Shown here in pieces: positions 1,195-14,638 of a stretch of 64,000 nt of DNA (position 1 is its first letter; each line of letters starts with the position of its first letter). The translations under genes and the position numbers were made by a program. This stretch comes from Lytechinus pictus (taxonomy: Eukaryota), in the NCBI RefSeq assembly GCF_037042905.1, contig NC_087246.1:47988001-48052000 (forward strand), given 5' to 3'. The notes below the pieces were generated by a model. It was not told the origin of the DNA. It saw nothing but the letters and a program-made list of their open reading frames with translations, and made no database searches.

Positions 1195-1923
1195 TTATAA
1201 TTTGCTTCCATCAGCTGAAAGTGCCTCTTCTTTATTCTCCCTTGCCATGAGGTCTATAAATCCCTGAGCTAAATTTTCATGATCAAAGCCTGGTTCCATT
1301 TCAAAGTCTGGAGCTCTTTGGTATACAGTACAAGCAGCAGAAATACATAGATACGCTGTCAAACCCCAAGTAATAAATCTCTTGCCATTGATAACGTGTT
1401 CAAAGTAGTGAAGCCAAGCAAATCGTCCTTTACTCAAGGTTCTTTGAGACTTGTGGTTATCACACAAGAGGAAATCGACAAGGGGTACACGGAAGACATC
1501 CTCTACTTCATTGGGGTTGATGTCAGGTTCAAACGTCTCAGGAACTAATCCTGCAACTGGTGTGATAAAGTAGCCATGCCGAGATGTCATTGGTGGAAGC
1601 TGGGACACCACCTCGACGTCCGAAGGATGAAGACCGATCTCCTCCCAGGACTCGCGTAGCGCCGTTGCAGTGTCATCTGCATCCTCGTCATCCCGCTTTC
1701 CACCCGGAAATGCGACATCACCAGCATCAGCCCGAAGGTGGGCTGCCCTCTTTGTAAGAAGTACCTCAAGATCTCCATTTTGACACAGTATCAAAGGCAC
1801 AAGAACAGATGCTTTCTTCCTCTGACTTGCAAACAACATAATATCTGATTCTTGCGTTCGTTCACTGAAGTCTCTTTCCAGGAGTCTAGTTCTGATGGTG
1901 GACTTGCTTAGTGGCGGTTCCAT
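1195..1923 (-). CDS. NUDT7: Peroxisomal coenzyme A diphosphatase (Nudix hydrolase), single coding exon, 242 aa
   Basis: CoA-pyrophosphatase motif LLTKRAAHLRADAGDVAFPGG followed by the Nudix box GKRDDEDADDTATALRESWEEIGL; TWGLTA motif; C-terminal PTS1 SKL. First in-frame ATG is at 1923; the track start at 1956 is non-ATG. Confidence 0.93.
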   Translation of the reverse strand: MEPPLSKSTIRTRLLERDFSERTQESDIMLFASQRKKASVLVPLILCQNGDLEVLLTKRAAHLRADAGDVAFPGGKRDDEDADDTATALRESWEEIGLHPSDVEVVSQLPPMTSRHGYFITPVAGLVPETFEPDINPNEVEDVFRVPLVDFLLCDNHKSQRTLSKGRFAWLHYFEHVINGKRFITWGLTAYLCISAACTVYQRAPDFEMEPGFDHENLAQGFIDLMARENKEEALSADGSKL

Positions 1924-2724
1924 GTTACTAGTAAATTGATATCCCAGACCCAGCACACTGTGAGTTTTGTTTTTGTTCTGTGGCTTTTCATCAGTTCATA
2001 CCAGTCTTGTATTTAAATTGAAGCCCAGCATGCGGCCTAGCTATCTCTACAGGCACATATCAGATACACGTTAAATCTTCAATCAGATTATGAATCCGCA
2101 ATACAAGCAATCCCATCTGCCTTGCTAGCTCATCAACATTAGCTGCTTACAGTGGCTAGTAGTAAACACTGCCTATTTTCTAAGTCTTAACTGTTAGTTC
2201 ACTTATAAATATAATCATGAAGTTCAGTTTGGATTGGAAGCTGCAGCATATAACGAGTGGTTCCCGCAACACGCGACATTAGGCAGTATCAGGCTCTGTC
2301 TATTGTAAATACTCAGTCTATGAAATTGAAAAGAGACAATAAATTATTGTTATGCTTCAGATCACGTCGCGTCGTTGTCGTTGTTTCAAAAATCCATTCA
2401 TTACGAAATCCTTGGAAAAAGCTTGATGTCAGGTGACACACCTCCTAGCTCCTCATATTAACTCAAGTGTAAACTAAATAGCAACATATCGAACAACAAC
2501 GCAGCTGCATACATCGGCTACATCTATAGTTCCACACGAGATCTACACCAAATGGCGCAATATATTTTGTAACCCGTCAGATGGCGCTAGACATTGTTGC
2601 ACTGGCCAAGTATCTTTGGCTACATTAACCAAAATCAATTTTCGTTAACTATATACATGTATTAGGTTCTAATTCAACCATTTACACAGAAGGACAAACT
2701 TTACGGAGCAATTAATCTACTGAA
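1924..2724. promoter_or_regulatory. Putative bidirectional promoter and 5' UTRs of NUDT7 and SHCBP1
   Basis: Divergent start codons 801 bp apart; locally more CpG; E2F-like TTCCCGC near 2261; two ATGGCG (YY1-like) motifs at 2552 and 2581. Confidence 0.55.
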
Positions 2725-5700
2725 ATGGATACTACGTATGTAATACAAACAAAAAAACAGAAGTTAGTGTCTGATACACTCACCGATTTCGCCAAAGAAG
2801 ACTCCCATGGGCTCAGCTGTCAACCGACTGATCAGCTTCCATGCAATGTCAACGACGAAGAGAGGCGGGAAGATTTGAACGGGGATGCGAAACAGAACTC
2901 GCCCGATACTCCTCCGACTAATAACGATCCTCGCTCGCCTGCTGCTGCGGAGCAAAACAGCAGCGGATTTGGAGACGAGATTGGACCGGATGAAGAACAC
3001 AAGAGTACCAATGATTTCGAGTCAGACGAAGAAAATGGAAATCCATTTCCTTCCATTTTTCAGACAGATAATCTCACTCATGCTGAACGTTTGCAAGCAT
3101 ATGCAAGTATTTTCCTGGCAAAATCGGAATCATGGGACGACAGAAGTTTTGATATTCATCAGGAAATGTATCTTTTCTTGACTGAAGCAGTCGTGAACTT
3201 TTGGACAGGGATCTGGAAAGTAGAAAATAATTGTGACGTTGTTATTGAGGTGAAGCACTTGTTTCATGATTTTTTGTTATTACAAATTTGATATGAAGAT
3301 GGTGATTATCATGATTCATGATTAGGCAAAAGCTACAGACACAGTCTCTGAGTGGAGTCTGACTCTGTAAATGTAAATTGGTTGTTCTGCTGAACTACAT
3401 TGGCTTTACTCATCAGTAAAATAAATCTCCATAAGCGATGGTTATTCCTGTCTAGATGACATTAGACTTTATACTGTGGTTATGTTTTAATGATGATGAT
3501 GATGATGATGCTGATGCCTGGTAAAGATGATGATGATGATGATCTTGATTGTAATGAATGATTGTGCTTCATTGCTTATCAATGATAATGGAGAATGTTC
3601 CGACGATGCAGACAAAGCTTAAGAGCTTTAAGGCCATAAGAGTGATTAATATGCTTGAATCAAAAGAACTGTGTGCTGCTAAGCAAACTTCTTTCTGCCA
3701 TGGAGGAGGTCATCATTCTTCATGAAATATGTAGTAGACTGTACAATTTTTATTAAGCTTTGACTGATGTAGATTCTCTAACAACAATTTCAGGACTGCT
3801 ATTTCACAAGTTCAAAACTTGGTTGGCCTTGCAGAAGAAAATCTTTCTTTCATCAAGCCTATTATATGAATGCATCTACTTTTTGAATGTTTAATTGACT
3901 ACTTTTTTTAAACTAGACCGACCATGCTCCACATCCAGAAAGCCGACAACAGCACCTGAAGGCCAAAGTGCACATCAGTGAACCCTTCCTGTGCATGCTT
4001 GATGGAGCTCTCTGCACTGAGGAAAACTCTGAGGAGAGAGATGAAGTGGAAAGGAAGATAAGAGGAATTCTAGAGAAATCAGAGGGACTTGTTGACCTCA
4101 CAGACCTCTATCCTGTCTACAACAAAACTGGCCTGCTAGACAACACTGCCTTGGCTATTGAACATGCTAGGTGTGTAAATTTATTGGACCATTTTCCAGA
4201 AATCATCATAATCGTGTTAGAACATGTCATAGAAATAATAAGAGATTACCGAATAGACCTAATTTTACAGATTGAGAAATTGGACTTCAGGAATGTCATT
4301 AGTCATCAGAACTTGTTTAAAAGTTGAAATAAAGCTATAGGAATTTGCTGTTGTCTGGCAATCAAATGACAGTCTGACAGACAATTCAATTGTTCCATTT
4401 TGAATATCTATAATCATAAGAATCCCCCCCCCCCATAAAAAAAAATGAATAAATGAATAAGGTAAATTCCACGCACAAAAAAGAAAAGAATAGATCAGTT
4501 TAAAAAAGCTGGATTTTGTTTTGATTTGTGTTCAATGCCAGGTTCTTCTACCAAAATCTTTGGAGACCTATGGATGATGAGGATGAACTAAGTGGATCAA
4601 AATACATGGATAAATATCTCAAACCAAGACTAAAATTGTGAGTAGGCCTATTGTGCTGAGATCTGTCAATGAAAGGGCCTCAAGCCCTGAATGTTCAGCA
4701 TCAGATGTATAATTCATCCATATCGTTGAATGGAATGACCTATATCTCCCTCTCCTATCCTTGCCTATAGTAGGGATCATGTAGGCCCTACCTGAATACT
4801 TATACCCCTTACTTACTCAAATGAACTGAGGGAGGAGGTCAATCTCCCGTTCTTCACTATTTCTGTGCAACCCAATCCTACTTTTTCACAAAATCAGATA
4901 TTTTCTATATACAGGGGTGTGAGAGTTCAGATTTTTATCTGATTTCAGATTTTTTTGTTTTGATTTTCAGCTTAATTTCAGCTTATTTTTGGCCTTCCTC
5001 TGTACAAAAAGTATGGGAGCTCTTTCTATTTCAGACTTTTTCAACACTCTTCAGCTTTTTTCAGATCTTTATTTGTGACCACTCACACCCCTGTTTATAT
5101 AATTTAAATAAATATTGTGAAGCTTCTGATACCAAGATTATGATCAGGACAAGAAGTCAGTTGGCAGTTTGTAGTTGTATGTTGTCTCATAAAGTATTTT
5201 TTCAGGAATTTGTGAAAACTTATAGAATTGAAATTATCTATAAATTACTACAAAGCACTGCTAATTCACATGATCCCATGCCATTTGAATAATATTTCTT
5301 TATTCAAGATTGATCAAATATAAATCTTAGAACCCAATCAGTCCTAAAACCAATACAATACATAAAAATAAAAACAATAAAGTACATAAGAAATTGACAA
5401 AGCGATGCATAATGAAACAAAATGTTTGTCAACATATTGTTGAAAATGTTTTCATCCAGGTTTTTGTGAAAGAGGGAATTAAGAACAAAAACATTCATAC
5501 ATGCATCTCATTTTCATAATCAAATAGAAAATATAAAAAATAATTTTGCCAGCTAAAATGAACTACACACCGACACCCTCTAGGCTTAACGTATGTCTCA
5601 ATGTCTTTGCAAGGTTTGCATCGATCAGAGGGGACCAGGATTCACATTGACCCTTCCCCCCTCCAAGTAAAAACTTAATTGTTTCTGGCTTCCATTCCTA

Positions 5701-8700
5701 ACCAAGAATGCAACATTCAGACCTTGTTCTCTTGTGCTAACTAGATTGAGAAATCAATTCTACTTCTCTTTATAAAATTCCTTCTACAAATCATACTGCC
5801 AACCTGTTTCATAAATCAAATAATGCACAGGCGTTGTGTGATGTTAGGGGCAATGGAGGCATTCTTAGTTATTCAAACACCTTGTGCTTCTCACATTCTT
5901 ATGACTATTATACCTTCAGTGCACCGCATCATTCCTAACATTATTTTATATTATTGAATAACACACTTGTAGCGTATATGACGTCAAGGAGAAGCGAATT
6001 CCAGCCCACATTGTAAGAAAGCACCAGATGGCTCTTTCTGAATGTCTCGACAAATACGACCGCATCGCCTCTCTTCAGGCTCAGCTGGAAGATGGTGATG
6101 GTAGCGAAGGCGGTGTTGATGAACTGGACATGAATGAGAGCTGTATGGTGGTTGACATCATGGGGCTTAATGAAGAGATTGAAGTCCTTAAGATGAAGAT
6201 GGAGAAACTTGAGAACCCTGTCTTGAGGTGAGCTATGAAATGGGGTTATGCTTTTCTATTTTAGAACCCAACTTTTGTGTCTTTGAAAATGTTCAATTCC
6301 GTTCCAAAGGGACATGAACTGGAATTTCAGTTTTGTCTTAGAATCACTGAGCCCCAAATCTGTCAATATTTTCTTATTCTGCTCTTTTACTCTCTCATCT
6401 CCATCCTCCTTTCCTTTTTTTTCTTTCCTCCTCTCTCTTATCCTGCATCTTTTCTCCTTTATTCTTTTATTATCTTCCACTTTCTTTCCTCCTCATCCTC
6501 TTTCTTCCCATTCTGCATCTTTTTCTCCTATTTTTATCTTCTTCTTCCCTTTCCTCTTCTCTTCCTCTTCTTCCTTCTTCTTATTCTCCATCATGTACTT
6601 AACCTCTCCTTTACTTTTTTTTCCTGCTGTAGGTCTTTGATGGATATCCCAAATGCAATGCTATCAGAGAGGAGTTATTTGGGAAGCCAAAGTAGAGCGG
6701 ACAGCTTGCCAAAGACATTCCTAGTCACTGAGACATTAACTGCCGGTATGATACAGGTACGGAAAGCCATTATGTTGACATTAAGACCTTCCTCATAGAA
6801 ATTTGATCGGGGAAGTGGGGACGACAAGTTTATATACATGTATGTGTTTCAATATGACTTTTCCTTCTTTTTTGGTCAGAGCTTGATGGACAGATAATTT
6901 GTTCACCTTTTTTTTTCAAATTTTGAGGTGCATTCATTTCCTGCAAGACGTAATTCATCATTGTTTGAGGAATGTCCCTACTTTGTTATCTTCTCATAGT
7001 TGTCTATTTAGAATTTTTTAAGGATCCCGCACTCATACATCTATAGATCACACTCGTTATAAGATGGGACCCAGGTTGTATGTAAATGCCCATTAATGTA
7101 TTTCATTGTCACTGTAGAATCTCAACCTAGGTCCTGATGTGGTCTTAGAGCACTGCAGATCACCCGGAGAAGCGCTGTCAAGGTCTTACAACGGTGACAC
7201 CATCTTAATCTTCCCTGGTTCCTACACTGGTGAAAGATTCTATACCCTCCAGCACTCTGTCACTATCAAGGGTGAGTTTGGACAATTTTAGGAATCAATT
7301 TTATAGTTGTATTTGATTCAAATTAATTTCAACCTTGGAAAGCAAACAATGCATCAATACATCATCTAGAACGCTTATGTATCAGTATTTAATCCTATCT
7401 TTGAAAAAAAAACAGAAGCGAGCATGATTTGCATCATGTGTGTGGTTTTATTCTCTTTAAATTCAACCATGTGAAATCGAGACCTCAGCCCTTATGTTTG
7501 TGGAATGTTTAATTTTGTTTAAATAGTAAGTGCCAAAGACATTCCTGAAGTTCAAATAGTCATTATTCTTTGTTTATTTTCTTTAAAATTTAAAACATAG
7601 TTTTATGAATGCATTCCATATCAGGATTGAAACAATCTTTAATGAGTTAACAATATTTCATTCATGTCGTATTAATTGCTTTGCTTTGTAAAAATTTTAT
7701 TTGATATTATGAAACACTAAAATGAATTAAATCAATTGAACTCCATTTAACAATGTAATAATCTAAACTCTAAAGTAGATTTAAATCATTCAGTGCTGTG
7801 ATGACAGTAACCAATGTTTACACATACCAGGATGTCACATGTCACAACCAAAGTGAAAATCACTACGGGTTACACGGGCCTAACTACAACTAGCAGGCAA
7901 AAGATATTCATTCGAGCCAACCCATTCTCAATTTTTAAATTGATATTGCTGATTGACATAAATGAATGAATATGACTGACAATCTAACACTGATTCTAGG
8001 GAGGGTACCTACTGAACTTCCTTTTTCCACATTAGAAAGATATATCACTACTATGGAACTATTTTTTTACTGGCGGAAGAATTAGGGCCATTTTACTCTC
8101 TGAAGTGACGAATTTGATCCCGTCAGGTGTAGTCTTCATAAATGCCGATTAATTTTTAAAATGAGCTGGTCGAGGTATACTTTTCTGGTCAGATATGGAA
8201 TGTCAGACATGTATCCTATCCACTGATAGTAAACATTCAACCCTCAAATTTCCTCATTTTTAATGAATTTTTTTAATGTGCCACTTTAACACACGAGTCT
8301 ATTGGAAATGAATTAGGCCTGTGAAACCTACGTGTACAAGGGGAAGGCTGTTTGAATTGGTGTGTGATGTTTACATTGTACTTGTTTTTCTGTAGGAGTA
8401 GGAAAAAGGAAGGATATTATCATCCGATGTGAAGAGTTGGCTGACATCTTCTTGGACTGTGACACGTCTGGGGCTGTGATTTCTAACCTGACCTTAGAAG
8501 ATGATAACAGTGCCACCAGTGAGGGCCTCATTGCTGTGCGTGCAGGAGGTATTTAAACATTCATCTTAGTTCGTTCCTTATCTTCATACATGAACCTTGT
8601 AGTTTAACACAAATATTTAATTTCAGTTATTTTCTAAATCATACAGCATAATAATACAACAAAAATTTAGAAGTGATACTTGTTATTTAACAATATATGC

Positions 8701-11700
8701 AAAATGCCCATTCATAATGATAATGATAAAATCTAAAAATAAAGCTTACGGTGAGGGTGCCTTCTGAATTTTAAGTACTATATATGATATATTTTAAAGA
8801 AACCAAACTTAAAAAACGAAGAAGGAAGAAAAAAATAGCACTTGCAAGCATACACAAAACAGTAAGGATGATATTGTCTTGAACCACTGAGCTTGATCGG
8901 AGAGAATAGGGAAAAGAAAGTGAAATAGGGATTAAATAAACAGAAATATAAAGGTTAGTAGTCCTGAGATTGTGCATAAAATGGGACAGGTCTGTTGAAG
9001 ATGCAAGCCAGTTCATTATTGATTTTGTACATAAATTCACAATAAAGGGCCAATTTTTAACACAGCATTGTGTCATGAAGTGCTTTACTCTTTGCACGCT
9101 GAATCGATTTTGGGGGGGGGGGTGGATAATAATGACAACTGTTTCTATGTTATTTTCTTTGATTGAAGATTTCTAAATTGCACCATTGATACTTTATGAT
9201 TATTATATAGATGTTATCCAAGAACTATTTATAAGCTTCTCTAACATGTATGTTAAAAAGGAAACTAATTATTACAATTGTTAAAATTGTACGAATGTGC
9301 AAAATTGCCACATCAGCGCGCAAAGGGTTAAATGAATATAAGGTCAATGACTTGATGTTCTATTGACTGGCCTCATTGCCCCTTTCATTAGCAATTGATG
9401 TTTTGTTGCCCCTTTTTAATTTCCCCATTTGTGCTGTTATATTGAATTGTGTGCTAAAGAAAAGCGACCTGCCCTCAAAATATCGTTTTGGAGTTTGTGC
9501 ATTTTTAAAAAAAATGTCATAACTCTTAAGGGCCGTAAATTTCTAGGCTGAAAAGAAAAATAGTGCATTAGATGAAGCTCCCCTCTTTAAAAAAAACCTC
9601 AATGAATAAATAATATATTAAGATATGATATGATAATGTCGACTTTATATTTTGTGCGATCTTTCTTTCATAATAGGCAGTTTAATAATGAATGGCTGCT
9701 TGCTCCAGAGTGGAGGAACAGGTGTTAATGTCTTCAGAGGAGGTTCTCTAGAGATGACAGGATGCGAGATCAAAGACATCCAGGTAGGCAAGGTTCATAC
9801 AAACTTTATGCATATGAATTATAGCGCCCTCCCTCAGAGGATATAGGAATACGTGTAAACGGAGTTGTCAGAGATTCACCAGTTACAGATCACCAGTGCA
9901 AGGCAAAGGCTTCAAGCTCTAAGATGGTGGCTCAATGACGTAAATGCACAAGGTCAACCCTCTATAACTTTCAAACAGTCCAAATTATCAAAATTGTTCA
10001 AGGATACAGCTAATAGGGAGTGCGTATGAAATCATGTTCATGCTTTCATTCTACACAACCTAAATGCAAATAAGATTGAATGACCCAAAGTAAAGGTCAC
10101 TCAGTTTAACAAAGAGCTGCACTCATCGGGGCATTTCTTGAAAGTACTTGTCAGACGTTTTATCAGATACGTCCTGTTTTTATCAGACAGTTACTATAGG
10201 GACTGCTTCTCGGCCAATCCAAATTTTTAAAAAGTTCTCAGATCTGGGCCCGGTTGCATAAAAGTTACTGTTATGGTAACTTTGCCATCCAATGGTAACT
10301 ACCATGGTAACAATGCTCATCAGCCAATCAAAATCAAGGATTCCATGAAAGTTACCACTGGATGGCAAAATTACCATAATAGTAACTTTTATAAGACACC
10401 TAGATAGATCCTTGTCATTTGATTGGTTGTTCGATATCGATCATTCAGCCCATTTCACAATGACGTCATCAACTGCAATTTTCGATCCATTCATGCAATT
10501 TTGGATCCATACGATTTTGTCCATAGACACCTCAAGTAATCCCACTCGTGTTTGCAGCGCGCATGATGTATATACGCGATAATCAACAGACCGAGCTCAC
10601 ACTGCATGAGCATATTTTGCATCGAAATTCATTAATTTCAGATGAAAAAGAATCTATTTTTAGGTGTCATATAAACCAAATAATGAATATTCTTTTCATT
10701 CGTGCAATGGACAGAATACTTCATTCGGTGAAAGATGAAATGAATGATCCATTCAAGTGGGCTACGCCTCATGGAATGGATCATCTCATCTTTCACCTCG
10801 TGAAGTATTCTGTCCATTGCACTCATAAACATTCATTATTTGTATATTATGCAACGGGGCCCTGACCTTTTGTCAGACGATAATATTGATGAAACACTTC
10901 CCTGGTAAGCAATTTTTTTTTTTTAATACTTCCATTCATTTCACAGAGGAATGGAGTGAGGTGCAAGGCAGGTTCATCTGTTATCATCTCTGATACAAAC
11001 ATCCATCGTTGTGGGTTACACCAGTTTGCCGAGGAAGATGGCAGTGATGTTGCTGATATCACCAAGGACAGTCTAACAGCCGGTATAATGGTTGAGGTAG
11101 GTCTAACCTCAAACAAATCGTTCCCCTTCCTGTATTACTAGACAAAGTGATAAAGCTGACCCAACCAAAACAGCACGTGAAATGGGTTGATGGTAATCAA
11201 TGACCCTGTCCATTCTTGGGGGTTTTAACCCATATGAAACCAAATTCTATATTTTTTACCAACTCCAACTTTATTTCGAAAGTATTACTCATTCATCTTC
11301 CAATTGACTCTCGGACGCATAATCGCTTAATGGGTTTCTTACAACATTCTTCCTTCTCACTATATGGTTCAGTTCCCAAATTCAGAGTGAATTTATAACA
11401 TACAAGATCGTTTGGTATTGACCGACCATTGTAAAACAGGTTCACTTGATAACTCCAGTCAGATTAAATATTAAATAGTGTTTTTTTAGATTGCTTGCAG
11501 TTTTGAGATAGACTGTAGACCTCACAACTTTAAAAACAATTTTAATTATGTTTTGTTTCTTCATTATGAAATGCTTAGAGTATAGTCACCATTAGACTTA
11601 CTTGCACTATTTGTTATCAAGTTATTTGATATCTTCAACGCATATTATTAGCTTTATCATCCATTTTGGTATTGAGCTTTATCATCTACTGACAACCCTA

Positions 11701-11995
11701 CACTATACAACACAAAGTAAGATGCATAAACCTCTCTTATCTCCACTAACAGATCCAGGAGAGCGATGAAAAAGACGATAAGACGACTCTAACCCTGGTC
11801 GATACCAAGGTCTATGATAACCATGGTGCAGGAATGGCCCTCCTTGTAGGATCAAACAAAGAAGAGGAACCGGAACCCATCACCACCGATGTCATCGGGT
11901 TAATCTCTGGTGTCAATGTTCTTGACATGAAGAATAATGATTTCAAGGATAACTTACTTGGAGATGCAATGCTAGCACATTTTGTTGATGATTAG
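2725..11995 (+). CDS. SHCBP1: SHC SH2-domain-binding protein 1 homolog (SHCBP1/Nessun dorma family), 10 exons, 686 aa
   Basis: Exons 2725-3249, 3917-4170, 4542-4637, 5973-6227, 6633-6756, 7118-7271, 8396-8548, 9677-9783, 10947-11096, 11753-11995. All introns are GT-AG and the exons sum to 2061 nt in frame. Family signature ALAIEHARFFYQNLWRPMDDEDE...KPRLKFVYDV, coiled coil KMKMEKLENPVLR, and a C-terminal pectin-lyase-like beta-helix (GDTILIFPGSY...SVTIKGVGKRKDIII). Confidence 0.9.
3490..3545 (+). repeat. Interrupted (GAT)n microsatellite in SHCBP1 intron 1
   Basis: Two runs of GAT repeats seen directly. Confidence 0.85.
10246..10862. mobile_element. MITE with a probable nested second element, in SHCBP1 intron 8
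   Basis: Terminal inverted repeats GGGCCCGGTTGCATA ... TATGCAACGGGGCCC; internal inverted segments at about 10680-10840. Confidence 0.6.
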
Positions 11996-12882
11996 ATGTT
12001 CTTGATGTGAAGAAAATGATTTCAAGGATAACTTAATTGGAGATGCAATGCTGGCACGTTTTGTTGATGATTAGCTGTTCTTGATGTGAAGAATAATGAT
12101 ATCTAGGATAACTTACTTGGAGATGCAGTGATGGCACGCTTTGTTGATGATTAAAAGTTCTTGACGTGAAGACTAATGACATCAAGGATATCTTACTTGG
12201 AGATGCAATGATGGCATGCTTTGTTGATGATTAAAAGTTCTTGACGTGAAGAATAATGACATCAAGGACATCTTACTTGGAGATGAAATGCTGCCTGGCA
12301 CGCTTTGTTGATGATTAGATGTTCTTGATGTGAAGAATAATGATTTCAAGGATAACTTAATTGGAGATGCAATGCTGGCATGCTTTGCTGATGATTAAAA
12401 GTTTTTGACGTGAAGAATAATGACATCAAGGATATCTTACTTGGAGATGCAATGATGGCACGCTTTGTTGATGATTAGCTGTTCTTGATGTGAAGAATAA
12501 TGATATCTAGGATAACTTACTTGGAGATGCAATGATGGCACGCTTTGTTGATGATTAGATGTTCTTGATGTGAAGAATAATGATATCTAGGATAACTTAC
12601 TTGGAGATGCAATGATGGCATGCTTTGTTGATGATTAATAGTTCTTGACGTGAAGAATAATGACATCAAGGATATCTTACTTGGAGATGAAATGCTGCCT
12701 GGCGCACTTTGTTGATGATTAGATGTTCTTGACATGAAGAATAATGATTTAATGGATAACTTACTTGGAGATGCAATGCTGGCACGCTTTGTTGATGATT
12801 AGATGTTCTTGATGTGAAGAATAATGATATCTAGGATAACTTACTTGGAGATGCAATGCTGGCCTGCTTTGTTGATGATTAG
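11916..12882 (+). repeat. Tandem array of 12 x ~80 bp units; unit = last SHCBP1 codons plus stop
   Basis: Unit ATGTTCTTGAYRTGAAGAATAATGA...GGAGATGCAATGCTGGCACGCTTTGTTGATGATTAG/TAA; units start at 11916, 11996, 12075, 12155, 12235, 12319, 12399, 12479, 12559, 12639, 12723, 12803. Confidence 0.95.
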
Positions 12883-13364
12883 AAATTTATTTGTACCATG
12901 CATAGTAGAGTGTAGGAATGTTAACAGAGGGCTTCACTCCCTTGTCTGTTGAGAACCTTGATGGCCAGAATACACAAAGTTCGTTTTGAAACAGAGGTTG
13001 AAAACCATGGTTAATTACATATGCTCCTGTGACAGTTGCTCCAGGCCTTATCTTATCCAAGTTGTAGGGTTAGGGTTGCAATATGGGTTTACGTTGGGAT
13101 AAGGGTTACGATGAGGAGTAGGGTATAGTCATAAATCCAGGGTTGAAGTTAGTCATTCGATTAGTGAGTGGAATCTACAGCAGAGCAGTTGTCTCTAGAG
13201 CAAATGTCATGGAATTGGTTTATGCAAAAAAATTTCATGCATTGAATTATACGTGTATAATGACAAAGCGGCCGATCTTGAACGCACATGTTTATCACAG
13301 GGCGCTGATCTGGCCTATGATTTCATTCGCCTCTGCATTAATTACTGGATGCTTACTTCATGGG

Positions 13365-13612
13365 GGGGGGTGTCATGGTCTAGTGGTTATGACTCCTGTC
13401 TTTCAATCTGAGGAATGTTGGTTTGATTCCCAGCCATGCATGTTTTCCTTCATCAAGAAATTTACCCCCATTGTGCTGCACTCAACCCAGGTGAGGTAAA
13501 TGTGTACCGGCAGGAAGTAATTACTCAAAAACATGTGAGCACCATAACTGGTAGACTAGCTTAGCCAGGTGGATACATGCGCTTTTCAAATCCTGTATTA
13601 TTTATTTATTAT
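13365..13612 (+). mobile_element. tRNA-derived SINE, degenerate copy of the 45655-45929 family
   Basis: A-box-like TGGTCTAGTGG, B-box-like GGTTTGATTCC, shared core GTGCTGCACTCAACCCAGGTGAGGTAAATG and a TATT-rich tail. Confidence 0.8.
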
Positions 13613-13815
13613 TGCTTGATGCCAAACTAAACGCAGTCAAAGAATGAAATCTGCAAAAAGCATGTTGTGTATTTAAAACCAGCTTTGTGAATTCAGCCCA
13701 TTAGGCTTTTGTATTCTTCAACTCAGCTGCTTGCTTGTCAGTTAATTATTCTGATTCAAAATTTCTTTTGTCATCTCAAATTTTGAATTTGTGGCATAGC
13801 ATCAGTATGTTGTCA

Positions 13816-14638
13816 TTGTCTCGCCTGCATAGCAGAGCGAGACTATAGGCGCCGCTTTTCCGACGGCGGCGGCGTCAACATCAAATCTTAACCTAAGGTT
13901 AAGTTTTTGAAATGACATCATAACTTAGAAAGTATATGGACCTAGTTCATGAAACTTAAGCATAAGGTTAATCAAGTATTAGTGAACATCCTGCTTGAGT
14001 TTCAGGTCACATGACCAAGGTCAAAGGTCATTTAGGGTCAATGAACTTTGGTCAAGTTGGGGGTATTTGTTGAATTACTATCATAACTTTGACAATTTAT
14101 GGATCTTGTTCATGAAACTTGGACATTAGGTTAATCAAGTACCACTGAATATCCTGTGCGAGTTTCAGGTCACATGACCATGGTCAATGGTCATTTAAGG
14201 TCAATGAACTTTGGCCGTGTTGGGGGTATTTGTTAAATTACCATCCTAACTCTGAAAGTTTATGGATCTAGTTCATAAAACTTGGGATATAAGAGTAATC
14301 AAGTATCACTGAACATCCCCTGTGAGTTTCAGGTCACAAAACCAAGGTCAAAGGTCAGTTAAGGTCAATAAACTTAGGCCATGTTGGGGTAATTGTTGAA
14401 TTGCCATCATAACTTTGAAAGTTTATAGATAGAGTGAATGAAATGTGGACATGGGTGTAGTTGACAAGTCTTAAGTCACCGTTCAAATGTCATTTATGGT
14501 CAATGAACGTGGTATTATGTCATTATATGAATGGTGTTTTTGTGAATGATTATTTTATAGTAGTTTTCAAAGTTAGCACTGCTGCTATATTAAATCGCGT
14601 AATGCAGGCGAGACTGCCAGAGGCGTTCCACTTGCTTT
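13816..14638 (+). mobile_element. Non-autonomous Helentron/DINE-1-like (HINE) element, family A, with ~3 internal ~163-bp repeats
   Basis: 5' subTIR GTCTCGCCTGCAT (13818) with an adjacent inverted copy GCGAGAC; (GGC)n tract; internal repeats at 14001, 14164, 14328; 3' subTIR ATGCAGGCGAGAC (14602-14614). Confidence 0.7.

What the first reader, a model, noticed from the sequence alone, without database searches (positions are those of the whole stretch)
11916..12882. SHCBP1 C-terminus plus stop codon amplified 12 times into the 3' UTR
Seen: unit 1 is the real coding end (VLDMKNNDFKDNLLGDAMLAHFVDD-stop). Eleven diverged copies follow, and each keeps TAG or TAA at the same place. The 80-bp unit is not a multiple of 3, so the protein is not extended. 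Copies 5 and 10 share a 4-nt insertion (GAAATGCTGCCTGGC), which points to block duplication. Inference: unequal crossover or gene conversion with unit 1 could swap the protein's C-terminal residues (e.g. AMLAHF to AMMARF or AMMACF), making the array a store of variant tails. It could also multiply UTR motifs or be a neutral VNTR.
Basis: partly seen in the sequence, partly recalled or inferred. Interest (0 to 1): 0.72.

Follow-up and report, generated by a model that had tools for sequence, protein, structure and literature searches.

The report
SHCBP1 coding-tail minisatellite in 3'UTR
The last 80 bases of a sea-urchin SHCBP1 gene, stop codon included, are repeated 12 times head to tail in the transcribed 3' untranslated region; this looks like an ordinary copy-number-variable minisatellite, not a store of alternative protein tails.

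Summary
TRF finds an 80-bp array of 12.0 copies at 11916-12883. Unit 1 is the true coding end of an intact SHCBP1-like gene, and all 12 units keep TAG or TAA in register. The exons match the Lytechinus pictus protein almost exactly.

- **Where it occurs:** The unit is found nowhere else in the 812-Mb genome.
- **Transcription:** Spliced RNA contigs run from the coding exons past the stop codon, through a collapsed array, into unique downstream sequence. At least some transcripts therefore carry the array in their 3'UTR.
- **Age:** L. variegatus has the same array at the same boundaries, with 5 and 4 units in its two copies of the locus. S. purpuratus and a more distant relative have one copy only. 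The array arose in the Lytechinus lineage and expanded to 12 here, partly by a multi-unit block duplication.
- **Decay of later units:** Seven of the 11 downstream units carry frameshifts or in-frame stops. Variable sites fall evenly on the three codon positions. Unit 1 stays conserved.
- **His/Arg difference:** The only difference in unit 1 is a CpG transition from the ancestral Arg.

Best reading: a tolerated, neutral 3'UTR minisatellite. The "store of variant tails" idea has no positive support. Earlier notes of this scan report the same kind of stop-spanning repeat at several other genes in this genome.

The parts
2725..11995 (+). SHCBP1-like gene, start codon to stop codon. About 10 coding exons; tblastn pieces lie near 2725-3267, 3917-4171, 4528-4635, 6028-6231, 6631-6756, 7118-7273, 8395-8550, 9676-9783, 10944-11094 and 11753-11995.
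   Evidence: tblastn of P0001 and P0007 against the window covers all 686-687 residues. P0001 carries Pfam SHCBP_N (E 5e-52) and Beta_helix.
11095..11752 (+). Last intron.
   Evidence: RNA contig X1 record 2 joins 10944-11094 directly to 11751-11973. The exact cut is ambiguous by 2 nt.
11753..11995 (+). Last coding exon up to the stop codon TAG at 11993-11995 (80 codons plus stop).
   Evidence: Translation is 98% identical to P0001 608-687 and aligns with the S. purpuratus and distant orthologue tails.
11916..11995 (+). Unit 1 of the array: the last 26 codons plus the stop. This is the ancestral, selected copy.
   Evidence: It differs from L. variegatus unit 1 at only 3 of 80 sites (2 synonymous, 1 His/Arg), while the non-coding DNA around the locus (introns and flanks) is about 87% identical.
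11996..12882 (+). Units 2-12, non-coding copies in the 3'UTR. Four unit types occur in the order A A B C D A C B B D A B, counting unit 1 as the first A.
   Evidence: Seven of the 11 have a frameshift or an in-frame TAG. Variable sites fall 8/7/9 on the three codon positions. 37 of 153 site pairs show all four gametes.
12150..12155 (+). ATTAAA hexamer created where a TAA-ending unit meets an AAG-starting unit. Two more lie at 12230-12235 and 12394-12399. These are candidate internal poly(A) signals; their use has not been tested.
   Evidence: Hexamer scan. The same junction type occurs in L. variegatus L006 between units 3 and 4.
12883..13166 (+). Unique 3'UTR sequence just behind the array. 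It is present in RNA contigs and is orthologous to the L. variegatus sequence behind its array.
   Evidence: X1 record 3 covers 12834-13166 with 0 differences, and X4 record 21 runs to 13164. blastn links it to L006 and L008.

Best explanation
This is a locus-specific minisatellite in the 3' untranslated region of an SHCBP1-like gene of a Lytechinus sea urchin (L. pictus, judging by exon identity). In a Lytechinus ancestor, the last 80 bp of the coding sequence were duplicated in tandem, ending exactly at the stop codon, with 1 nt of microhomology at the junction. Each copy carries the stop codon and 80 is not a multiple of 3, so translation still ends at the first stop and the protein is unchanged; selection therefore tolerates the duplication. 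The array has since grown and shrunk by unequal exchange or slippage between units. It now has 12 units here and 5 and 4 in the two L. variegatus copies. Growth here included a roughly 3-5-unit block duplication. The downstream units drift neutrally while unit 1 stays under purifying selection. The array is transcribed as part of the mRNA tail. Shown: the anatomy, the gene identity, transcription through the array, the lineage restriction, the copy-number differences and the decay of the copies. Inferred: the mutational mechanism and the neutrality.
For: The array and its units are real. The unit occurs only at this locus in the 812-Mb genome. The gene is SHCBP1-like: P0001 has SHCBP_N and Beta_helix, sources name it so, and the window's exons match the L. 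pictus protein P0007. The tail is ancestral coding sequence, conserved in S. purpuratus (73% identity) and a distant relative (45%). L. variegatus has the array with the same boundaries, 5 units in L006 and 4 in L008. There is no array behind the stop codon in S. purpuratus L009 or in L007. Characters shared across species are the CTGC-insertion unit and the TAA|AAG junction followed by GACATC. Nine of the 11 downstream window units sit closer to another window unit (2-4 differences) than to any L. variegatus unit (6-9); W2 ties at 4 and W11 is nearer L. variegatus unit 1. This indicates recent lineage-specific growth. The downstream units show no coding constraint. Units are mosaic, with 37 of 153 four-gamete site pairs. 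The spliced contig X4 record 21 runs from the coding sequence past the stop into 12735-13164, and X1 record 3 covers 12834-13166. There is no RNA structure signal (z -0.84) and no Rfam family.
Against: Neutrality is inferred from the lack of any sign of constraint; it is not demonstrated. The 3' third of the unit varies little, but the units are too recently related to test this. The RNA evidence comes from assembled contigs, which cannot give copy number, 3' ends or abundance. X4 is of unrecorded library type, though its piece begins exactly at the splice acceptor. The count of 12 rests on the assembly alone, because raw long reads were not available. ATTAAA hexamers inside the array could give it an effect on 3'-end choice.
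Confidence: 0.8

Rival explanations
1. The array multiplies a cis-regulatory element in the 3'UTR. The element could be a protein or small-RNA binding site, or internal ATTAAA poly(A) signals. On this reading, copy number tunes SHCBP1 mRNA stability, translation or 3'-end choice.
For: The array is in the mRNA. Three ATTAAA hexamers arise at unit junctions, and one such junction is also present in L. variegatus L006. In run X1, contig depth falls from 15.8 on the coding exon to about 5-6 behind the array, though the tool warns that contig depth is a poor measure.
Against: Copy number is not conserved (12, 5, 4). L008 has no TAA|AAG junction. There is no structure signal and no known RNA family. 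S. purpuratus and the distant relative manage without the array. No motif was tested.
Confidence: 0.12
2. The array is a store of variant C-terminal tails. On this reading, gene conversion or unequal crossover moves downstream unit sequence into unit 1 and changes the last residues of the protein.
For: Units clearly exchange sequence with one another (mosaics). Four of the 11 downstream units (4, 6, 7, 11) still have an open 26-codon frame. Unit 1 is polymorphic at 11974, A/G giving His/Arg.
Against: The unit-1 peptide is the same in both Lytechinus species apart from His/Arg. Arg is ancestral, being shared with S. purpuratus. The His codon CAT is a CpG-to-CpA change from CGT and does not match the only His-like donor, unit 10, which has CAC in a different context. 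Seven of the 11 donors are broken. Variation in the donors shows no codon-position bias. No AMMARF or AMMACF tail appears in any unit 1. The tail is conserved over long evolutionary distance, which argues for purifying rather than diversifying selection.
Confidence: 0.04
3. The array, or its length, is an assembly artefact.
For: The count of 12 was not checked against raw reads. A transcript contig (X4 record 21) holds only about 3 units.
Against: All 12 units differ from one another, unlike an assembler's reiteration. The same array is present in two independently assembled L. variegatus loci. Contigs of run X1 lie on every array bin. A 967-bp array is far shorter than long reads. Short-read k-mer contigs are expected to collapse such repeats.
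Confidence: 0.03

Closest known systems
3'UTR minisatellites / VNTRs (for example the 40-bp VNTR in the 3'UTR of human SLC6A3/DAT1; recalled from general knowledge, not tested here)
   Same: Head-to-tail units of tens of bases in a transcribed 3'UTR. Copy number differs between haplotypes and species. Units are heterogeneous and mosaic, and evolve by unequal exchange or slippage.
   Different: Here the unit is visibly derived from the gene's own last 26 codons plus the stop, and unit 1 is still the working coding end.
Other stop-spanning coding-tail repeats noted by this scan in the same genome (CEP162, UFSP2, ELMO, SLC35B4, RGP1; AI notes, not re-tested here)
   Same: The last codons plus the stop codon are copied head to tail into the gene's own 3'UTR. 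The repeats are reported as transcribed and copy-variable, and were judged tolerated and neutral.
   Different: The genes, unit lengths and copy numbers differ. The SHCBP1 array has four unit types and partial 5-unit higher-order periodicity.
Silent-cassette gene-conversion systems (Neisseria pilE/pilS, trypanosome VSG, chicken immunoglobulin pseudo-V genes; general knowledge)
   Same: One expressed copy lies next to an array of non-expressed sequence-related copies that can recombine.
   Different: There is no evidence of donor tracts in the expressed copy, no diversifying selection and no dedicated conversion machinery. Most donors are frameshifted or stopped. This is a formal resemblance only.
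SHCBP1 / SHCBP1L / Drosophila Nessun Dorma family
   Same: The orthologue has the Pfam SHCBP_N plus right-handed beta-helix architecture, and the window's exons align over its full length.
   Different: The C-terminal 26-residue tail used as the repeat unit found no non-echinoderm match in a library-wide phmmer search: two SHCBP1-like hits, the L. variegatus protein and one more distant, unnamed relative, plus three weak partial matches to much longer proteins that were not examined.

Membership tests
Minisatellite / VNTR | Head-to-tail tandem units of about 10-100 bp | tested here: met
   TRF reports period 80, 12.0 copies, score 1428.
Minisatellite / VNTR | Copy number varies between alleles or close species | tested here: met
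   There are 12 units in the window, and 5 and 4 in L. variegatus L006 and L008, which are 94% identical and collinear. Variation within the window species is only hinted at by a roughly 3-unit RNA contig.
Minisatellite / VNTR | Variant units interspersed, with mosaic units from unequal exchange | tested here: met
   Four unit types are interspersed. Units 6 and 9 are chimeric. 37 of 153 site pairs show all four gametes, and 17 remain after dropping the CpG columns.
Minisatellite / VNTR | Locus-specific rather than a dispersed satellite or transposon | tested here: met
   DNA and protein searches of the whole genome hit only this locus.
SHCBP1 family gene | SHCBP_N domain followed by a right-handed beta-helix | tested here: met
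   P0001 matches PF23762 (E 5e-52) and PF13229 (E 2e-8). The window's exons cover residues 1-687. Single exons alone gave no Pfam hit.
Higher-order repeat array | Multi-unit period clearly better conserved than the basic unit | tested here: inconclusive
   Period 404 scores 91% against 88% for period 80. Only u3-u5 versus u8-u10 are clearly paired.
Silent-cassette conversion store | Donor-derived sequence tracts present in the expressed copy | tested here: not met
   Unit 1 differs between species at 3 isolated sites. The amino-acid change is a CpG transition that matches no donor.
Silent-cassette conversion store | Diversifying rather than purifying selection on the expressed segment | tested here: not met
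   The tail is conserved from Lytechinus to S. purpuratus and to a distant relative. Unit 1 shows 3 of 80 changes, against about 13% divergence in the non-coding DNA around the locus.
Recoding (readthrough or frameshift) extension | An open frame continues beyond the stop | tested here: not met
   Readthrough gives 4 codons and then TGA. Every frame has 32-33 stops.
3'UTR regulatory repeat | Measurable effect of the repeat on mRNA fate | not testable with these tools
   Only contigs were available. There is no structure signal and no Rfam match.

The most novel reading that the evidence does not exclude
The array is a functional, copy-number-tunable 3'UTR module for a cytokinesis gene. Two mechanisms are conceivable. 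Internal ATTAAA signals made at unit junctions could shift polyadenylation. Alternatively, the coding-derived copies could act in cis as decoys for a factor (small RNA or RNA-binding protein) that recognises the end of the coding sequence. More broadly, the recurrence of stop-spanning coding-tail repeats at several genes of this genome could reflect a specific mutational or selective process at gene ends rather than mere tolerance.
Probability: 0.08. Interest if true: 0.55.

Novelty: new member of a known kind. Interest (0 to 1): 0.25.

Why it matters
The array is a clean, datable example of how a tandem duplication that spans a stop codon is tolerated. The first stop keeps the protein intact, so the copies can expand and decay in the 3'UTR. 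It gives a convenient length marker (12, 5 or 4 units) for Lytechinus haplotypes and species. With the similar cases noted elsewhere in this genome, it warns annotators that C-terminal "extra copies" in sea-urchin 3'UTRs are usually relics. It does not change what is known about SHCBP1 function.

Tried and rejected
- Pfam on single exon translations found nothing. Gene identity had to come from the fetched full-length orthologues.
- I searched exon by exon by reference and did not build or search a joined spliced model of the window's gene.
- A maximum-likelihood tree of all 22 units was almost unresolved, with 12 of 18 inner branches open. I relied on rare shared characters and nearest-neighbour distances instead.
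- RNA folding of three units gave z -0.84. Rfam gave only one sub-threshold snoRNA-like match in the last intron, at 32 bits against a gathering score of 70. Neither supports a structured RNA.
- ARAGORN found no tRNA in 12800-14600, despite a tRNA-like stretch near 13376.
- Three literature searches found no paper on sea-urchin SHCBP1 or on stop-spanning tandem duplications of this kind.
- The exact S. purpuratus protein P0006 and the L. pictus protein P0007 had no contig on record. S. purpuratus was reached through isoform P0011.
- The jump 12007 to 12735 in X4 record 21 was considered as a 3'UTR intron and rejected. It is in register with the repeat and has no GT..AG ends, so it is either collapse or a shorter allele.

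Full report
**Observation**

The sequence at 11916-12882 is a head-to-tail array. TRF gives period 80, 12.0 copies, 88% matches and score 1428. I cut it at the in-register stop codons and obtained 12 units, no two identical.
- Ten units are 80 nt, unit 2 is 79 nt, and units 5 and 10 are 84 nt because of a CTGC insertion.
- Every unit ends in TAG or TAA.
- The units fall into four types in the order A A B C D / A C B B D / A B.
- TRF also scores a 404-bp (5-unit) period at 91%. Units 3/8, 4/9 and 5/10 differ by only 2, 6 and 4 positions.

**The gene**

The last exon (11753-11995) translates to 80 residues. A library-wide phmmer search placed them at the extreme C-terminus of a 687-residue protein, P0001, at 98% identity.
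- P0001 is named by its sources as SHC SH2 domain-binding protein 1-like of Lytechinus variegatus.
- It carries Pfam SHCBP_N (E 5e-52) and Beta_helix.
- tblastn of P0001 against the window finds about ten exons between 2725 and 11995 that cover all 687 residues.
- The Lytechinus pictus protein P0007 matches most exons at 100% and ends in the same AMLAHFVDD. Its own record is withheld by the contig look-up. The window is therefore L. pictus or something very near it.
- I searched exon by exon and used fetched orthologues. I built no joined model of the window's gene.

**Unit 1 is the ancestral coding end**

The tail is conserved in S. purpuratus (73% over the last exon, ending ...GDAMLARFVDN). 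It is still recognisable at 45% in a more distant relative from assembly GCA_964275005.2. The array was therefore made from the coding end; the gene did not run into a pre-existing repeat. The unit occurs nowhere else in the 812-Mb genome by DNA or protein search, so it is not a dispersed satellite or transposon.

**Transcription**

All four runs laid were assembled contigs.
- Run X1 record 2 joins 10944-11094 directly to 11751-11973. This shows that X1 is RNA and fixes the last splice acceptor.
- X4 record 21 (2410 nt) begins its last-exon piece exactly at that acceptor. It runs through the stop codon to 12007, then continues in register at 12735 and on to 13164.
- X1 record 3 covers 12834-13166 without a difference.
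- At least some transcripts therefore read through the array into unique downstream sequence.
- The roughly 3-unit form in X4 may be a shorter allele or ordinary k-mer collapse. Its ends are not GT..AG, so it is not an intron.
- Contigs cannot give 3' ends or copy number, and I had no raw long reads.

**Evolution**

- *L. variegatus.* Its assembly holds the NUDIX-SHCBP1 locus twice, 7 Mb apart, collinear and about 94% identical. These are either retained haplotypes or a young segmental duplication. Both copies have the array with the same start and the same end at the stop. L006 has five units, the last shortened to 72 nt. L008 has four units, the second with the same CTGC insertion and the last 68 nt.
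- *More distant species.* S. purpuratus (L009) and the distant relative (L007) have a single tail followed by unrelated sequence and no 80-bp repeat.
- *Shared characters.* Both Lytechinus species have the CTGC-insertion unit, and the junction of a TAA-ending unit with an AAG...GACATC unit. These indicate an array of several units before the two species split.
- *Recent growth.* Nine of the 11 downstream units have their nearest relative inside the same array (2-4 differences) rather than in L. variegatus (6-9). Unit 2 ties at 4 differences, and unit 11 is nearest L. variegatus unit 1. The non-coding DNA around the locus is about 87% identical between the species. Most of the growth to 12 units is therefore recent and lineage-specific.
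- *The tree.* A maximum-likelihood tree of the units was too poorly resolved to add more.

**Constraint**

- Unit 1 differs between the two Lytechinus species at 3 of 80 sites, two of them synonymous. About 10 differences would be expected at the neutral rate.
- Seven of the 11 downstream units are broken in the tail's frame. Four have an in-frame TAG (units 3, 8, 9, 12), one has a 1-nt deletion (unit 2) and two have the 4-nt insertion (units 5, 10).
- Variable columns fall 8/7/9 on codon positions 1/2/3.
- All + frames behind the stop are closed, and readthrough would add only MFLM.
- Units are mosaic: 37 of 153 informative site pairs show all four gametes, and 17 remain after removing the CpG columns. 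Exchange between units does happen.

**The variant-tail idea**

The single amino-acid difference in unit 1 is at 11974. It is A (His) in the window, in X1 and in both L. pictus proteins. It is G (Arg) in X4, in both runs of organism B (X9, X16) and in the L. variegatus and S. purpuratus proteins.
- Arg is ancestral.
- CGT to CAT is a CpG transition.
- The only downstream unit with a His-like codon (unit 10) has CAC in a different context.
- No unit 1 carries the AMMARF or AMMACF tails.

Exchange with unit 1 is mechanistically possible, but nothing shows that it has happened or been kept. The long-range conservation of the tail argues for purifying selection.

**Possible function as RNA**

- Folding three units gives z -0.84.
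- Rfam has no match in the array.
- Where a TAA-ending unit meets an AAG-starting unit, an ATTAAA hexamer is formed, at 12150, 12230 and 12394. One such junction exists in L006 but none in L008.
- Internal polyadenylation is therefore conceivable and untested.
- The drop in contig depth behind the array in X1 (15.8 to about 5-6) is too weak a measure to count.

**Context and verdict**

Earlier notes of this scan, which I did not re-test, describe the same kind of stop-spanning coding-tail repeat in the 3'UTRs of CEP162, UFSP2, ELMO, SLC35B4 and RGP1 in this genome. All were judged tolerated minisatellites, so this scan has met the phenomenon before on other DNA. Three literature searches found no paper on this locus or on the phenomenon under the terms tried.

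The best explanation is an ordinary, transcribed, copy-variable 3'UTR minisatellite born from the coding end (confidence 0.8). The array is a new member of a known kind, and interest is low to moderate.

Noticed in passing
window 1195-1956 (- strand): A 253-aa ORF lies head to head with SHCBP1. The neighbour in the same position carries Pfam NUDIX in L. variegatus (both copies), S. purpuratus and the distant relative, so the NUDIX-SHCBP1 pairing is conserved synteny.
   Followed up: partly
L006 and L008 (GCA_018143015.1, CM031016.1 at 33.22 Mb and 26.16 Mb): The L. variegatus assembly holds the whole NUDIX-SHCBP1 locus twice, 7 Mb apart, collinear and about 94% identical. This is either a retained haplotig or a young segmental duplication. 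The two copies have 5 and 4 array units.
   Followed up: partly
window 11974: An A/G difference gives His or Arg six residues from the SHCBP1 C-terminus. His appears in the window, in X1 and in both L. pictus proteins. Arg appears in X4 (same organism label), L. variegatus and S. purpuratus. It looks like a CpG transition that may still be segregating.
   Followed up: partly
window 12735-13164: The X4 transcript contig differs from the window by 31 letters and 12 gaps in 430 nt behind the array, but by only 4 letters in 257 nt of the last exon. This suggests a very divergent 3'UTR haplotype within the same labelled organism.
   Followed up: no
window 13916-14452: A 163-bp tandem repeat (3.3 copies) has enormous summed contig depth in all four runs.
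   Followed up: no
window 13408-13574: A very high-copy element has summed depth of about 7e4 in the RNA runs. A tRNA-like stretch begins near 13376, but ARAGORN calls no tRNA. It is probably a SINE-like repeat sitting in or just behind the 3'UTR.
   Followed up: partly
window 10068-10902: A high-copy repeat (summed depth in the thousands to tens of thousands) fills much of the penultimate intron of SHCBP1.
   Followed up: no
window 11520-11596 (- strand): A sub-threshold Rfam match to a C/D-box snoRNA model (snoR53, 32 bits against a gathering score of 70, E 0.098) lies in the last intron. It is most likely chance.
   Followed up: no
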